Assembly (NCBI RefSeq): GCF_037042905.1
Contig: NC_087258.1
Location: forward strand, 24,552,001-24,616,000
Length of the DNA: 64,000 nt
Direction: 5' to 3'
Origin: Lytechinus pictus
Lineage: Eukaryota
In this document: positions 4,444 through 10,207 of the stretch, in pieces
Layout: each line of letters begins with the position of its first letter
Position numbering within the stretch: position 1 is the first letter of the stretch
Translations under genes and position numbers: made by a program
The notes under the pieces: model-generated
Told to the model about the DNA's origin: nothing
Seen by the model: the letters and a program-made list of their open reading frames with translations, nothing else
Database searches by the model: none

Positions 4444-5550
4444 GATATAACATAACGATTAAAAAATAGGTATTCCTGGACTCGTTTCTACTTTTGTTTT
4501 GGAAAACTTTGTCAAAACAAAATTTTGACCTAAACTATATACATCAACATAGTTAGTGAATGTATCAAAGTCGTCATTTCCCGTCCCTATATATACGCAG
4601 ACGCTGATCCAGGGGGCCGGAGCGCCTCGGCCCCCTTTCTTATTGGCCGAACAAAAAAAAAAAAAAAAAAGAGGCGGAGAGAAAAGGAAGAGAAAAATAG
4701 GAAGGAGAGGAAAACATATTATAAAGAAGAAGAAAACTTTATAGAGTAAGGGGGTGGAGGGAATTAGAAAACAGAAAATCATTCACGTCGCCACAATATA
4801 ATATATAAAGATAAAATTTGCGCTCACTCTTCGCGCTAGCACCGTATACACTTATTTAAAACATATCCTCTTCATTAATTCCTATATAAACAGTCATTAA
4901 AGTTGCTTATTCGGGTCAATATAAAAAAAAAACAGCTCATGGAGTGACAAAAACATCCGTTCATGATAACAAACAATGACATTCCTTTATATTATGTCTA
5001 TATATATACAATAGTTTCAACTTGCGCTTTGCGCTCGCATCATTATTATTTTTTTTTTTTTTAAATGAGAATGTGGAAAATGAATTCAATTCAATATCTC
5101 GTCCTATATGAATATCTATTCTTTTTTCAAAAGTAAAGATATCTTACATATCAACTTCAGTCTTTATGTATTTTATTCGACAATGTCGGATCCACCCATG
5201 TCTATCCGTAGTACTTAATCACAAACGCACATCTCCTCAAGTACCGGACTTACGTCTATATAGTTCTTATTGTTCAAGTGAAAGTTTTCGGTGTTTGCCT
5301 ATAGGACTATAAGGCCAGTCACGCCCGACTCTTTAAACAAAAGCTCGGTTCTGTGAAAGACAGAAATGATGTCAGGCCAGTGCTGGCTAGTACCACGGAC
5401 CTATACAATAGGTCCATGCTGATACCAGGGTATACATGCAAGTTTATTTTAAGGATATCAATTTAAGGGCATTTAAAAGGGAAGTTCGGAACTATTCTGT
5501 AAGCATTTATGAACTAGTTTCTCTGGATAGATGATCAATTATTCGGCCTG

Positions 5551-7864
5551 ATGAAGCAATTAGTTCTACTTCTCCTTCTCGGCTTCGCCGGTTTTTCATC
5601 GGCCCAAGTTTTCGGATTTGGTGGCTGTCCTGAGGTGCGTTTAGCCGAGGACTTCCAGCTTGACCGCTACCTGGGTCGTTGGTATGAAATCACAAAGTTC
5701 TACGCTTCCTTCGAGGCTGGTCTTTCGTGCGTGACGGCCGAGTATCGACCAGGAGATGATGGTCAAATCCTTGTCATCAACACCGGACGAACGCGAGATG
5801 GCGAGGCGACGAGCACCATTCTGGGGGAAATCCTACAACCTAACCCGGACGAAGGAGCAAAGCTGCAGGTCCAATTCTTTAACAGACCTGGTAAGTTTTT
5901 GTTCATCATTCTCACCAACAATACGAGATGTATCTTTTTAAACCGTATTCACATTATTCTAGGGAGTCTAAAATGCGAATTTGATTCTGACGAAGAAAAA
6001 ATAGGAGAAGAATAGAAGAAAAGACAAAAGAGCTAAAATGATATCCTTTTCTGAATATGCCTCTATCACAAATTAGATTTCCATTTTCAAAAAGATTATT
6101 TTTGCTCGATCTTTGATCGCTCGCATTTTTTCATACAGTGTGCCACCTTTTGGCGTGCCCCAGGGCTCACGACTCGGTCCCTTGCTTTTTGCATTATACA
6201 CAAGTAGCCTTATTAATAGCACTCAAAATAATTTTCCCGAAGTTTCTTGTCATTGTTATGCCGACGACACACAATTGTATATATCTTTTAGGCCATCTTC
6301 TATACCTCTGCAGACACAAGTGTTTCAAGGCTAGAACAATGTATCATTTTTATTCGTAGCTGGATGCTCAATAATAATCTGAAATTAAATGATAGCAAAA
6401 GTGAGTTTTTGCTCATTGGCGCCTCACAGCAGATCTCTAAAATTGATATCAACTGTATAAAAATTGGAGTATCCAATGTCAACCCATCTGATACTGCAAG
6501 GAATTTAGGAGTTTATTTTGATACAAACCTCAATATGGAAACCCAAGTCACGGATGTATGCAAATCAACATATTATCTCCTCTATATAACCTTCGGCGCA
6601 TTCGCAAATACTTTGATCAAGAAAGTATCAAACTGGTGGCACATGCTCTGATTACAAGTAAGCTTGACTACTCTAATGGTTTGTTGTTTGGAATGCCTGA
6701 TAATCTTATTTCTAAGTTACAAAGAGTCCAAAATTCATGTGCAAGACTTATCTACCGTGTCCCAAAGTTCAGTTCCACTACACCTCTTCTGAGAGAACTC
6801 CACTGGTTGCCTGTACGTCAAAGAATTTCATTCAAAATTCTGTTAATTGTATATAAATCATTAATCGGTCAAGCCCCACATTACATTACATAATTACACA
6901 AACTTAAAACCCAATCACACAGTCGAAGCCTGCGAAGTTCCACAGATAAATTATTGTTTCAGATCCCATTTCACAAAACAAAAGTCATACTTGGTGATCG
7001 TGCATTTGCACTTGCTGCCCCCCCCCAAAAAAAAATATATATATAAATATATATTTTTAATGTATAAACAGTTCGTTGAAGAACAGAGTAATGTGATGGT
7101 GAAAGTTGTAAAGATCCAAACTTGTTCAATGTTGTATACAATAATTATGAACAAGCATTACTATTTTCACAATGAGGGAGAGGAAGAGTAATTACCTCAG
7201 CCCCTGGCCAGCAATGCACCCAAAAAGAAAAGAAAGAAAGAAAGAAAGAATCAAACAAACAAAACGCAATCTCATTTTGTATACCGATGTTTAAATATTT
7301 CCACCGTCTGTTTTCCATCTTTCAGGGCAAACAGGCGAGTACTGGGTTCTAGATGTGGACTATGACAGTTATGCTCTGGTACACGGATGCACAGAAATCT
7401 TCTTTGGTTGGTTTAACTTCCAAAACAACTGGGTTCTCGCCCGTGATCCGTTCCCGTCTGAAGACGTCATCCAGAATGCTTTGAGAAAGTTTGGAGAACA
7501 GGGCATCAATGTGGACAAGTTCATCAGAGCCGATCAAACGAACTGCGAGACAGAACCACCACGTCCAACAGAGAGGCCTGGTACTTATAGACCACGCCCA
7601 TCCGAAGGCACTGACAGACCACGCCCCTCAGAGGGAACCGACAGGCCACGCCCATCCGAAAATCCTGACACTGAAAGACCACGTCCATCAGAAGGCACTG
7701 ACAGACCACGCCCCTCAGAGGGAACCGACAGGCCACGCCCATCCGAAAATCCTGACACTGAAAGACCACGTCCATCAGAAGGCACTGACAGACCACGCCC
7801 CTCAGAGGGAACCGACAGACCACGCCCTACAGAGCCACCAGCATCTGAAAGACCGCGCCTTTAA
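5551..7864 (+). CDS. Apolipoprotein D-like lipocalin 1 with C-terminal Pro/Arg/acidic tandem repeat; exons 5551-5890 and 7326-7864; 292 aa
   Basis: Signal peptide MKQLVLLLLLGFAGFSSA|Q. Lipocalin motifs YLGRWYEI, YWVLDVDYDSYALVHGC, WVLAR and DQTNC; four Cys in ApoD spacing. Phase-1 intron: GTAAGT donor at 5891, pyrimidine tract + CAG acceptor ending 7325. The spliced frame is open (879 nt) to TAA at 7862-7864. Confidence 0.93.
6139..7019 (+). mobile_element. Degenerate non-LTR retrotransposon (L2/CR1-group) reverse transcriptase fragment in the intron of lipocalin 1
   Basis: Motifs GVPQGSRLGPLLFALY, CYADDTQLY, LKLNDSKSEFL, ARNLGVYFD, LITSKLDYSN, LQRVQNSCARL and LRELHWLPVRQRISFKIL are spread over three frames (frameshifted). 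Confidence 0.92.
7588..7835 (+). repeat. Coding minisatellite: 27+27+33 nt subunits forming an 87-nt higher-order unit, about 2.7 copies
   Basis: Reads (RPRPSEGTD)(RPRPSEGTD)(RPRPSENPDTE) twice, then two more 9-aa units. The two 9-aa subunits use different synonymous codons, and that pattern is preserved between higher-order copies. Confidence 0.95.
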
Positions 7865-8929
7865 GAATTGTAGTCGTTAACATGCGACATCCTACATTGT
7901 ATGATTCCTAGCACTAACGGACAAAGGTCAACATGACCTGAACAAACTGACGAAAATTATCACATTCTATAAATAATGATAGATGAAGAAAAGAAACAAA
8001 AAAGGATGAAAGAAAGAAACAAAAAAATGAACGATCACAAATATTTCAGTTTCATTTTCTGTTTTAAATTTTCCATTTATTTTCAAACATTATCACTTAT
8101 TCTAATTTGTGTTACTCTTCCGTTGTTACCTTTGATATTTTGTATAGCCTCCTTTTCCCTCCTTTTAAACTGTCTCCCGTCTCTCCTTTATATTATAATT
8201 TTGTAATATACGTACTGAAACTAAGTTACGGGGGCTTGCCTCTCATACAAGCTTTGCTTTTCTTGGCAAGCCCCTCCGTTCTGTTTTATATAGTCATTAT
8301 AGTCAAAGTTACTTTAGTTCGCATTAGTTCTCATTGTTTATAACTTACTCCGATTGATGTTGTACTTCAAATTTGACTATGTATTGTTTGATTTTGTTGT
8401 GCTTTGTGAACGGAAAATGAATAAATCTAAATCTAAAATCTAAAAACATAATTATGGGCCCATACCATAAGTCTTAAACACGAGTTTCTAAATGTATCCA
8501 GATCTGCTGTCGTGACTAGCTAGCTGATCCCTGGATTTAAACTTTCAAGGTTCGGTTAATAAGATTTGAATCATAATTATTTGAGATTTGAAAATTTATC
8601 ATTCGGATGAAATTTGAATCCAGAGTCCAACCAGTATAAAACGTGTCCGGTCTGGATTTAGCTTAAATACCTGTAATTTAGAGACATTAATTATTGACAG
8701 AAGGTACAGCGTTTAATGTCACCGTTTGTTATTTTTTTCGACGAAGGGAACCGGTTTTCCTTGAAAAAAATACTTCACTTTTGTTGAGTGCACGTGTCGA
8801 TAGTATGAGATTGTATTAATTTGCTTTGAAGCTTCATAAATAAGTATGAATTAAAGAAACAACTTGGTCAAATTGAAATTGGTATTATCAACTTATTTTC
8901 GCTGGTATTGTTGTATTACGATTCCTTAT

Positions 8930-9088
8930 GCTGCAGTCACATTTCCCCTACGGCGGCCGTACGGCGAGTCGAAAACAGCCGTTTTGTTCATTTTTATTCA
9001 AACTACCTATTGTGTACCTGTACAAAAAATGATAAAACGGCTGTTTTTGACTCGCCGTAAGGCTGCCGTATGGGAAATGTGACTGCGC
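8930..9088. mobile_element. Short palindromic MITE
   Basis: Arm GCAGTCACATTTCCCCTACGGCGGCCGTACGGCGAGTCGAAAACAGCCG pairs with CGGCTGTTTTTGACTCGCCGTAAGGCTGCCGTATGGGAAATGTGACTGC. Confidence 0.8.
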
Positions 9089-10207
9089 CATTGGTGGGTT
9101 GTAATGAGATAATAAGGGGATGTCTCTTTTGTTGACGGAATATTTATGTTTCCATTTTGTACGTTCGAGACCAATTTAGTTCTGAATAGTGTAGGGGCGG
9201 GGTTACAGTGGTGCAATCGTCAGGAAAAGGAGAAAAGGAAAAAGAAGGAAAGAAAGATAAAAGAAAGAAAGAAAAAAAAAGGGAAGCAAAGAAAAAGAAG
9301 AGTGTTTAAAATGAGAATTTGGGTCGCTTAACCAATAGTACCCGTGTTATTCAATTGAGGGGGAGGGGAATAGGTCACATTTTAGGTCGCTTTGCCGCCC
9401 CTATAAAAAATACACTGTAGAATATAAGATAATAAGGGCGCTTTTTCTGGATTAATAACAGTGATTTCTGAACTCAACAAAAAGTTTCTGCCTTGTCACA
9501 CCCAAACTTAAACTTTTACCAGTAGCATAATGGAAGGAAGGAGGAAGGAGAAAAATGCATAAGAAGAATAGGAAGTAGTAGTAGAAGAAAGGGAGTGAGA
9601 GATGGGTGAAATAATAATTATAGAGAACATTATGTGTGTCGGTGTGTAGATGAGTGAGAGAAAGAAAGTGGGAGAGAGAGAGAGAATGAGAGAATTCGGA
9701 GAGAAAGGGGGATTGACAGTGCATGAACTAAAGAAATTGACATTAAGAATAGGAAAGGCCGGGGGTAATGTGGATGAACGAAATTAAGAACAATAGACAA
9801 AAATAAAAAAATCAGATTGATTAAAATTCAACTCAAATAATTAAACTTATTCTGACCATTTTTTAGGCTAGGCCTATATCTAATATATAATTATAGCTCC
9901 CAATGCCCTTGTGATGGATATATTGTATATAAATTGTAGATTTTCGAGTGTATTCGTTTCTTCCTCATTACGTAATCTGATGGCATGTCCCTTGTCTCTT
10001 TAAACCCCCTTTGTCATTCTTTATTGACGGAACATGTTGATGTTTACTTTCCCTTTGTGTACATATCGCTATACGGTACCATACTGTGACAGCGTATGGT
10101 ATAAAAAACGTGACATCAATCGGGGGAGGGGCAAGACTATCTGTGACGTCATTTTCCCAAATTGAATAAATATGATCATGATGATGGGGTAATAGAGTTA
10201 CACAACC

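What the first reader, a model, noticed from the sequence alone, without database searches (positions are those of the whole stretch)
7552..7864. Lipocalin fused to a higher-order RPRPSEGTD/RPRPSENPDTE polyampholyte repeat
Seen: about a third of lipocalin 1 is a charge-alternating, Pro-rich repeat arranged A-B-C-A-B-C-A-B (27/27/33 nt). A and B encode the same peptide with different codons, while the 87-nt units are nearly identical. This indicates an old 9-aa repeat kept at protein level and then recently amplified as a trimer. Known: typical ApoD proteins end a few residues after the last Cys. Inference: a disordered tether or mineral/matrix-binding tail with many Ser/Thr modification sites, probably length-polymorphic.
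Basis: partly seen in the sequence, partly recalled or inferred. Interest (0 to 1): 0.75.

Follow-up and report, generated by a model that had tools for sequence, protein, structure and literature searches.

The report
Sea urchin lipocalin with repeat tail
A secreted apolipoprotein-D-like lipid carrier of the sea urchin Lytechinus pictus ends in a real, transcribed, selectively preserved and length-variable proline/arginine-rich repeat tail, and its purple-urchin counterpart was found by mass spectrometry inside larval skeletal spicules, so the tail may tie a lipocalin to the biomineral matrix.

Summary
Window 5551-5890 plus 7326-7864 encode a 292-aa secreted ApoD-like lipocalin of Lytechinus pictus (identical to XP_054768135.2). 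Its last 105 residues are a tandem array, A-B-C-A-B-C-A-B at 27/27/33 nt (7589-7816). A and B encode the same nonapeptide with 5 synonymous and 0 replacement differences (P about 7.5e-4). The 87-nt units are 98-100% identical.

Spliced RNA contigs from three independent studies run into the repeat and out into the 3' UTR without a mismatch.

The interpretation needs correction:
- This is not a fusion. It is an in-exon expansion of an ancestral 11-aa C-terminal motif (RPRPSExPxT[DE]), present from 1 to 13 copies in other echinoids.
- The A-B-C arrangement predates the L. pictus / L. variegatus split.
- Only the last 87-nt gain is recent: a 263-aa L. pictus variant lacks exactly one unit.

Tail dN/dS (0.05-0.30) is as low as in the lipocalin domain.

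The 333-aa S. purpuratus ortholog (Sp-Apod) is listed in the published larval spicule-matrix proteome. It ran there near 55-60 kDa, so the tail was still attached. That gives indirect support to the matrix-binding guess.

The function in L. pictus is untested. I rate this a new variant of a known kind, of moderate interest.

The parts
5551..5890 (+). Exon 1: start codon, signal peptide and the N-terminal half of the lipocalin domain (phase-1 end)
   Evidence: ORF and GT donor at 5891. Pfam Lipocalin_2 E 3.3e-14. Spliced contigs join 5889/5890 to 7325/7326 in runs X1, X5 and X9. The model reproduces XP_054768135.2.
5891..7325 (+). Intron 1 (GT..AG), carrying a reverse-transcriptase fragment of a retroelement at about 6113-6331
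   Evidence: Joint 'skips 1435, GT..AG' in three runs. RVT_1 E 1.5e-9.
7326..7546 (+). Exon 2, first part: C-terminal half of the lipocalin domain up to the last conserved Cys (C187)
   Evidence: Pfam Lipocalin E 3.3e-6 on exon 2 alone, and 80.7 bits on the whole protein. The alignment to human ApoD 2hzq ends here.
7547..7588 (+). Tail leader ETE-PPRPTERPGTY: a degenerate first 11-aa unit, present in all echinoid relatives
   Evidence: E190-P191-P192-x-P194 are invariant in the 9-protein alignment.
7589..7816 (+). Higher-order repeat A-B-C-A-B-C-A-B (27/27/33 nt; RPRPSEGTD, RPRPSEGTD, RPRPSENPDTE)
   Evidence: TRF period 87, 98% matches. Unit table. A versus B: 5 synonymous and 0 replacement differences. 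The collapsed unitigs 7615-7720 and 7778-7818 in RNA contigs fit this structure.
7817..7864 (+). Terminal variant unit RPRPTEPPASE, then RPRL and stop codon TAA
   Evidence: The same terminal unit is present in both L. variegatus genes.
7865..8121 (+). 3' untranslated region, as far as RNA contigs cover it
   Evidence: Contigs 7789-8090 (X1), 7789-8121 (X5) and 7789-7933 (X9).

Best explanation
The stretch is the 3' part of exon 2 of a two-exon gene for a secreted apolipoprotein-D/Lazarillo-type lipocalin of Lytechinus pictus.

Shown:
- The gene is spliced and transcribed with the repeat included.
- The tail is translated in this frame and kept under purifying selection as strong as that on the lipocalin fold.
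- It arose by tandem amplification of the subfamily's own 11-residue C-terminal motif (core RPRPSE).
- Copy number changes in register with the repeat: 1 to 13 units among echinoids, and 263 versus 292 aa within L. pictus. Unequal exchange or replication slippage is the likely cause.

Inferred mechanism:
- The tail is an extended, disordered, polyproline-II-rich, well-mixed polyampholyte.
- It resists trypsin-like proteases, because every Arg but the last is followed by Pro.
- It is probably O-glycosylated on its Thr-x-x-Pro sites.
- It acts as the module that holds the lipid-binding barrel in the extracellular or skeletal matrix of the larva. The 333-aa S. purpuratus ortholog is occluded in cleaned larval spicules with its tail attached.
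- Repeat number would set reach or valency.
For: - Gene model and identity: (human ApoD E 5.8e-24, four aligned Cys).
- Transcription: the exon 1-exon 2 joint and zero-mismatch contigs into and out of the repeat in three studies. The unitig breaks at 7633, 7615-7720 and 7789 sit exactly where a k=31 graph of this repeat must break. In X9 the depths flank:U2:U1 are 12.8:28.5:45.2, against 1:2:3 expected.
- Selection: A versus B has 5 silent and 0 replacement changes, P about 7.5e-4. Up to 6 different DNA versions encode RPRPSE within one gene. Tail omega is 0.05-0.30 versus domain omega 0.24-0.30, at dS 0.12-0.24, between L. pictus and two L. variegatus genes.
- Age and variability. The tail-bearing subfamily is one clade, support 100/99.
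- Composition: Pro 26%, Arg 21%, fraction of charged residues 0.43, net charge -0.01, kappa about 0.08, 12 TxxP, no dibasic site. 21 of 22 Arg are followed by Pro.
- Matrix: Glean3_04885 Sp-Apod (333 aa, 38.17 kDa) is in the intracrystalline spicule matrix with 4 unique peptides that occur together only in P0067. It is scored '++' in spicule and '-' in spine, test and tooth (PMC2909932). It was found in gel slices 7-8, beside the 59- and 69-kDa proteins. A 38.5-kDa protein ran in slices 10-15 and 23-kDa proteins in 12-15.
Against: - No data place the L. pictus protein in spicules or in skeletogenic cells.
- The spicule proteome lists over 200 proteins, many of them cytosolic or membrane proteins, so presence does not prove a role.
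- No tail peptide was seen. That is expected, since the tail has no tryptic sites, but it leaves the tail's presence resting on gel position alone.
- The Lytechinus tail is net neutral whereas the S. purpuratus tail is acidic (pI 4.75). A simple calcium- or carbonate-binding charge mechanism is therefore not conserved.
- A PMC cis-regulatory-module supplement has no ApoD entry.
- One RNA run of the species shows no reads on the exons (X23).
- The AlphaFold model was uninformative.
Confidence: 0.5

Rival explanations
1. The tail is a generic hydrated spacer or 'entropic bristle', probably glycosylated. It raises solubility, hydrodynamic size and protease resistance of a circulating or egg/larval lipid carrier and has no specific role in biomineral. 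The spicule-matrix detection would then be passive entrapment.
For: The composition is that of a well-mixed strong polyampholyte with 26% Pro. Net charge differs between genera. The spicule proteome contains many bystander proteins. The P. lividus gonad transcriptome reports an ApoD transcript higher in ovary, though which paralog is unknown.
Against: The exact hexapeptide RPRPSE, not just the composition, is kept across Strongylocentrotus, Lytechinus and two further taxa while its codons drift. Sp-Apod was among the top third by emPAI and was spicule-specific among four skeletal matrices.
Confidence: 0.3
2. The tail is a neutral, tolerated low-complexity expansion with no function. It is kept only because slippage regenerates it.
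For: Copy number changes freely between species, paralogs and probably alleles. Paralogs with one or two units exist (P0005, P0004, P0006).
Against: Omega of 0.05-0.30 in the tail equals that of the folded domain. The all-silent A/B divergence has P about 7.5e-4. The A/B codon signatures are conserved between species, which argues against mere recent slippage. The frame stays open in every taxon.
Confidence: 0.07
3. The tail is a precursor of released short peptides (RPRPSEGTD-type), by analogy with multi-copy peptide precursors or Pro/Arg-rich antimicrobial peptides.
For: Tandem identical peptide units. RPRP motifs recall Pro/Arg-rich peptides (own knowledge).
Against: There are no dibasic or furin-type sites. 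Every Arg is followed by Pro, so trypsin-like enzymes and the dibasic-site processing enzymes that make multi-copy peptide precursors have no site to cut. The units are net neutral, not cationic. The S. purpuratus protein ran well above the size of a tail-less domain.
Confidence: 0.03
4. The repeat is an assembly artefact or is not part of the mature mRNA.
For: None found. Short-read contigs cannot span the array, so the exact copy number in any one RNA sample is not directly read.
Against: Three independent studies give zero-mismatch contigs entering and leaving the array, with graph breaks exactly as predicted. RefSeq proteins of two assemblies and of L. variegatus carry the same structure.
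Confidence: 0.01

Closest known systems
Human apolipoprotein D (PDB 2hzq) and the ApoD/Lazarillo clade of lipocalins
   Same: Best solved-structure match, E 5.8e-24, over residues 21-188. G-x-W motif, four aligned Cys and a signal peptide. Tandem gene clusters are also known for ApoD in teleosts (PMC6325677).
   Different: ApoD ends a few residues after the last Cys, and grasshopper Lazarillo ends in a hydrophobic GPI signal (own knowledge). Here 105 hydrophilic repeat residues follow, with no hydrophobic C-terminus.
Sp-Apod (Glean3_04885 = XP_001183266.1) of Strongylocentrotus purpuratus
   Same: Member of the same subfamily, 69% identical in the domain. Same RPRPSE-core tail. Identified in the larval spicule matrix (PMC2909932).
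   Different: 13 units of 11 aa (EEPETE/EEPGTD types), net acidic tail, and no 9-aa units or A-B-C order. I found no paper that mentions its tail.
Sea urchin spicule matrix proteins of the SM50 group (SM50, SM32, SM37, PM27)
   Same: Same architecture: a secreted globular domain followed by Pro-rich tandem repeats. Occluded in larval spicules (PMC2909932).
   Different: Those carry a C-type lectin domain and different repeats (Gly/Pro/Asn/Gln-rich by own knowledge). The lipocalin tail is a charge-alternating Arg/Glu/Asp repeat. No homology.
Pro-rich rigid spacers such as the TonB (Glu-Pro)n-(Lys-Pro)n region, or mucin-type PTS domains (own knowledge)
   Same: Alternating charged residue and Pro, expected extended polyproline-II conformation, Thr/Ser beside Pro as O-glycosylation context.
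   Different: No sequence relation. Ser+Thr is only 20%, lower than in typical mucin domains. The cellular setting is different.

Membership tests
Lipocalin family, ApoD/Lazarillo clade | Lipocalin domain profile above the curated threshold | tested here: met
   PF08212 80.7 bits (cut-off 24) and PF00061 55.8 bits (cut-off 23) on the 292-aa protein.
Lipocalin family, ApoD/Lazarillo clade | Closest solved relative is ApoD, with the G-x-W motif and the four Cys of the two ApoD disulfides aligned | tested here: met
   2hzq_A E 5.8e-24. The alignment shows GRWYEI against GRWYEI, and Cys at query positions 26, 60, 135 and 187 opposite ApoD Cys.
Lipocalin family, ApoD/Lazarillo clade | Eight-stranded beta-barrel fold | tested here: inconclusive
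   The AlphaFold2 model from a 9-sequence alignment has mean pLDDT 37.5 and cannot be used.
Lipocalin family, ApoD/Lazarillo clade | Binding of a small hydrophobic ligand | not testable with these tools
   Needs biochemistry.
Sea urchin spicule matrix proteins (occluded matrix proteins) | Protein recovered from the intracrystalline matrix of cleaned spicules | tested here: inconclusive
   Met for the S. purpuratus ortholog: 4 peptides unique to P0067, scored '++'. No data for L. pictus.
Sea urchin spicule matrix proteins (SM50/SM30 families) | C-type lectin-like domain | tested here: not met
   Only lipocalin domains were found.
Sea urchin spicule matrix proteins | Expression in skeletogenic primary mesenchyme cells | not tested
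   No ApoD entry in the supplements of PMC5859501. Those supplements are not a full expression table. The Alx1-type site count in the window equals chance.
Mucin-like O-glycosylated PTS domain | High Pro/Thr/Ser content with glycosylated Thr/Ser | tested here: inconclusive
   Pro 26%, Ser+Thr 20%, 12 TxxP and 10 P[ST] sites. The ortholog migrates about 15-20 kDa above its mass. Glycans were not measured.
Pro/Arg-rich antimicrobial peptide precursors | Net cationic units flanked by processing sites | tested here: not met
   Net charge per residue -0.01, no dibasic sites, every Arg followed by Pro.
GPI-anchored Lazarillo-type tail | Hydrophobic C-terminal GPI signal | tested here: not met
   The tail ends ERPRL. 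Mean hydropathy of the tail is -2.3.

The most novel reading that the evidence does not exclude
The RPRPSE repeat array is a previously unrecognised biomineral-targeting module. It carries a lipid-binding lipocalin into the forming calcite spicule, for instance at the membrane/amorphous-carbonate interface. Its copy number varies between and within species and tunes occlusion or skeletal growth. This would be a lipocalin-based counterpart, evolved independently, of the lectin-plus-Pro-repeat SM50 proteins.
Probability: 0.2. Interest if true: 0.7.

Novelty: new variant of a known kind. Interest (0 to 1): 0.5.

Why it matters
Lipocalins are usually compact barrels. A conserved, length-variable disordered tail is an unusual addition, and I found no description of it in the papers searched, although the proteins sit in public databases.

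The link to the larval spicule matrix of S. purpuratus suggests that a lipid carrier belongs to the echinoid skeletal toolkit. It also suggests that its repeat tail is a second, independent case of a globular domain joined to a Pro-rich repeat in spicule proteins.

The locus is also a clean small example of a higher-order coding repeat. Silent-site drift, purifying selection and recent unit gain can be told apart within it.

L. pictus can be bred and gene-edited in the laboratory (own knowledge), so a tail deletion is a practical experiment.

Tried and rejected
1. AlphaFold2 on the 9-sequence alignment gave pLDDT 37.5 throughout. It is unusable for either the barrel or disorder, so I ran no fold search.
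2. A tail-only phmmer against 1.84 billion representatives gave 54 hits. Only the Lytechinus cluster is related. The other 53 are unrelated periodic low-complexity proteins without the RPRPSEGTD-type unit; only P0020 has any RPRP at all, in a different repeat. A word-based search with the S. purpuratus tail added only bacterial low-complexity hits.
3. Exact look-ups of the 263-aa and the older 292-aa L. pictus proteins found no contig. I therefore cannot tell whether the 263-aa form is an allele (haplotig) or a second locus of the older assembly. The present assembly has a single copy.
4. Paper searches by accession numbers, peptide motifs, Sp-Apod/SPU_004885, and lipocalin or ApoD plus sea urchin terms found nothing on the tail. 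Test/spine supplements and the tooth paper's main text have no ApoD entry.
5. Supplements of PMC5859501 have no ApoD entry. An L. variegatus embryo table lists only a different cluster member.
6. An Alx1-type palindrome scan gave 5 sites against 4.8 expected, so no signal.
7. The antimicrobial-peptide, GPI-anchor and kinase-motif (S-x-E, S/T-x-x-D/E) readings are rejected on sequence.
8. The raw RNA run X23 gave no reads on the exons, with only about 6% of the run read. This is uninformative about tissue.
Full report
**What is there**

The window is sea urchin DNA. The region holds a two-exon gene: exon 1 at 5551-5890, a GT..AG intron at 5891-7325, and exon 2 at 7326-7864. The spliced product is 292 aa and is letter for letter RefSeq XP_054768135.2, 'apolipoprotein D-like [Lytechinus pictus]'.

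Pfam places a lipocalin domain at residues 36-186 (Lipocalin_2, 80.7 bits). The best solved relative is human ApoD (2hzq, E 5.8e-24). It aligns with residues 21-188 and shares the G-x-W motif and all four Cys. The N-terminus looks like a signal peptide; this is read by eye and from where mature ApoD starts in the alignment.

The gene is the first of four tandem lipocalin genes in the window. The other three end 17-27 residues after the last Cys, and two of those short ends are acidic.

**The repeat**

Tandem Repeats Finder gives 7589-7827 with period 87, 2.7 copies, 98% matches. Nested within it is a period-27 reading at 70%.

Parsed by codon, the tail reads as follows:
- a leader, ETE-PPRPTERPGTY;
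- units A, B, C, A, B, C, A, B (RPRPSEGTD, RPRPSEGTD, RPRPSENPDTE);
- a variant unit, RPRPTEPPASE;
- RPRL, then the stop.

A and B differ at five third positions and at no replacement site. Nei-Gojobori counts are 5 differences on 7.3 silent sites and 0 on 19.7 replacement sites. In simulation, five random changes are all silent with P about 7.5e-4. Units 2 and 3 are identical, and unit 1 differs from unit 2 at two silent sites.

**Is it expressed, and is the assembly right?**

Contigs from four public runs were laid on 5400-8300. Three runs from three separate studies, one of them an oligo-dT marine metatranscriptome, each hold:
- a contig joining 5889/5890 to 7325/7326 and running on to 7633;
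- a 106-nt contig at 7615-7720 with raised depth;
- a contig from 7789 into the 3' UTR, reaching 8090-8121 in X1 and X5 and 7933 in X9.

The two contigs that bear on the repeat, the spliced contig and the 106-nt contig, have no mismatch within exon 2.

These break points are exactly what a k=31 graph must produce. Position 7603 is the last base that sets unit 1 apart from units 2 and 3, and 7819 is the first base specific to the terminal unit.

In X9 the depths of flank, long unitig and short unitig are 12.8, 28.5 and 45.2. The assembled array predicts a 1:2:3 ratio.

No joint inside exon 2 was seen. The repeat is therefore in the mature mRNA and is not an assembly artefact.

In X1 the long unitig is 3.7 times the flank. 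This may hint at longer alleles but is not reliable. A fourth run (X23, raw RNA reads, about 6% sampled) had no reads on the exons.

**Relatives**

Protein searches found the following.

| Source | Protein | Length (aa) | Tail |
|---|---|---|---|
| L. variegatus | P0002 | 286 | long |
| L. variegatus | P0008 | 263 | long |
| S. purpuratus | P0067 | 333 | 13 units of 11 aa, RPRPSEEPETE / RPRPSEEPGTD |
| S. purpuratus | P0005 | 197 | one unit |
| Unidentified echinoid, metatranscriptome or run assembly | P0003 | 261 | 6.5 units of 11 aa |
| Unidentified echinoid | P0004 | 207 | two units |
| Unidentified echinoid | P0006 | 204 | one and a half units |

The last three tails were read.

On a tree of the lipocalin domain, all tail-bearing and short-tail forms make one clade (support 100/99), apart from the window's other three lipocalins.

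The ancestral element is therefore an 11-residue C-terminal motif with the core RPRPSE. It has been amplified independently and to different extents in several lineages. The Lytechinus 9-residue A and B units are shortened derivatives.

The tail lies in the same exon as the end of the barrel. This is an internal expansion, not a fusion.

**Timing**

The L. variegatus locus (L001) carries two tail-bearing genes in tandem:
- the upstream gene reads A B C A B plus the terminal unit;
- the downstream gene reads X C A B C A B plus the terminal unit.

The A-type and B-type codon signatures are the same as in L. pictus. The A/B distinction and the A-B-C order are thus older than the species split.

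The L. pictus 5' flank, gene and near 3' flank match the upstream L. variegatus gene best, at 85-91% identity. The distal 3' flank continues into the region downstream of the second gene. dS points the same way: 0.119 to the upstream copy and 0.180 to the downstream copy.

The upstream L. variegatus gene has the 263-aa arrangement. So does XP_054768140.1, a second L. pictus protein from an earlier annotation. That protein differs from the window's protein by two residues in the domain and by the absence of exactly one A-B-C unit.

The present assembly has only one copy. The extra 87 nt in the window is thus a recent gain, consistent with the 100% identity of units 2 and 3. L. pictus holds at least two length forms, either allelic or very recently duplicated.

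**Selection**

Between L. pictus and the two L. variegatus genes, the alignable tail has omega 0.05-0.30 at dS 0.15-0.24. The lipocalin domain has omega 0.24-0.30.

Within single genes, RPRPSE is written in up to six different DNA versions. The peptide, not the DNA, is what is conserved.

**Properties**

The 105-residue tail has the following composition and features:
- Pro 26%, Arg 21%, Glu 14%, Thr 11%, Ser 9%, Asp 8%;
- fraction of charged residues 0.43, net charge -0.01 per residue, kappa about 0.08, which makes it a well-mixed strong polyampholyte;
- 12 Thr-x-x-Pro and 10 Pro-Ser/Thr sites;
- no N-glycosylation sequon, no dibasic site, no S-x-E motif.

Twenty-one of 22 Arg are followed by Pro, and the same holds in every relative. 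The tail therefore offers no site to trypsin-like proteases.

Extended polyproline-II conformation and O-glycosylation are inferences from general knowledge, not measurements.

**Function: the literature link**

The supplementary tables of Mann et al. 2010 (PMC2909932) list Glean3_04885, 'Sp-Apod/similar to apolipoprotein D', at 333 aa and 38.17 kDa. The sample was the intracrystalline matrix of hypochlorite-cleaned S. purpuratus larval spicules.
- It was identified by four unique peptides at 16% coverage, with emPAI 9.0.
- It is scored '++' (top third by abundance) in spicule.
- It is absent from spine, test and tooth.
- All four peptides occur together only in P0067, the 333-aa tail-bearing protein.
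- All four lie in the barrel. That is expected, because the tail has no tryptic sites.

It was found in gel slices 7-8 of 16. The same gels give these reference points.

| Protein | Mass (kDa) | Gel slices |
|---|---|---|
| Acetylcholinesterase | 69 | 5-7 |
| Copine A | 59 | 6-8 |
| Sp-Apod | 38.2 | 7-8 |
| YP30-like | 38.5 | 10-15 |
| Sorcin | 23 | 12-13 |
| Cyclophilin | 24 | 13-15 |

The protein therefore still carried its tail; the barrel alone is 19 kDa. It also migrated some 15-20 kDa too slowly, as Pro-rich charged or glycosylated chains do.

This is the only functional evidence. It concerns the ortholog, and a proteome of over 200 proteins includes bystanders. The presence of the L. 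pictus transcript in oligo-dT marine metatranscriptomes fits a planktonic larval source but does not prove one.

**Verdict**

- it is an expansion, not a fusion;
- the old unit is 11 aa;
- the A-B-C order is ancient, with only the last unit gain recent.

The best reading is a secreted ApoD-type lipocalin whose conserved, protease-resistant, disordered repeat tail ties it to the larval extracellular or skeletal matrix. I hold the functional part at about 50%. The main rival is a generic glycosylated spacer on a lipid carrier (about 30%). Neutral expansion, peptide precursor and artefact are unlikely.

I found no paper describing the tail, so I rate it a new variant of a known kind, of moderate interest.

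Noticed in passing
window 6113-6331 (+), within intron 1: A reverse-transcriptase fragment (Pfam RVT_1, E 1.5e-9) of a retroelement sits in the lipocalin intron. RNA and other contigs at 6145-7012 match it only at 90-97% identity, so they come from other copies of the element.
   Followed up: partly
window 13418-14655, 18518-20253, 24249-27226: Three further tandem lipocalin genes, 33-47% identical to the first. They end 17-27 residues after the last Cys. Two of the short ends are acidic (DDNDDEDG and EGEEEIDDGTGEGSD). No RPRPSE motif.
   Followed up: partly
L001 3863-6248 and 10001-11978 (L. variegatus) versus window 4687-9300: L. variegatus has two tail-bearing genes where this L. pictus assembly has one. 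The L. pictus gene and its near flanks match the upstream copy, and the distal 3' flank matches the region after the downstream copy. This suggests either loss of one copy by unequal exchange in L. pictus or a collapsed assembly.
   Followed up: partly
G000:C19:7493241-7494156 (-): A fifth lipocalin locus on another chromosome-scale contig, 44-47% identical to the first gene, with an in-frame TAG inside the exon 2 match. It may be a pseudogene or the TAG may mark an intron boundary.
   Followed up: no
window 5355-5550: The spliced contig of run X5 extends more than 190 nt upstream of the start codon, beyond 5400. That of run X1 starts at 5537. This suggests two transcription starts or read-through.
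   Followed up: no
window 7615-7720: In run X1 the collapsed repeat unitig has 3.7 times the depth of the flanking exon, against 2.2-2.3 in X5 and X9. The X1 animals may carry alleles with more 87-nt units.
   Followed up: no
P0001 (older XP_054768135.1): The precomputed Pfam list names PF27509.1 for this protein. The local Pfam copy gave no such hit at E up to 10, so I could not identify that family.
   Followed up: partly
P0068 (S. purpuratus XP_011680315.1, 173 aa): A third S. purpuratus model has the exon 1 part of the barrel followed directly by garbled tail-like text (PGTDRPRPSEEPGTD). It looks like a mis-spliced or frame-shifted prediction of the same or a sister gene.
   Followed up: no
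L. variegatus NC_054753.1:17941269-17944160 (from PMC13200730, supplement 3): Another ApoD-like gene just beyond the fetched locus is listed with expression values of about 200-320 in embryo samples. Members of this cluster are therefore strongly expressed in embryos.
   Followed up: no
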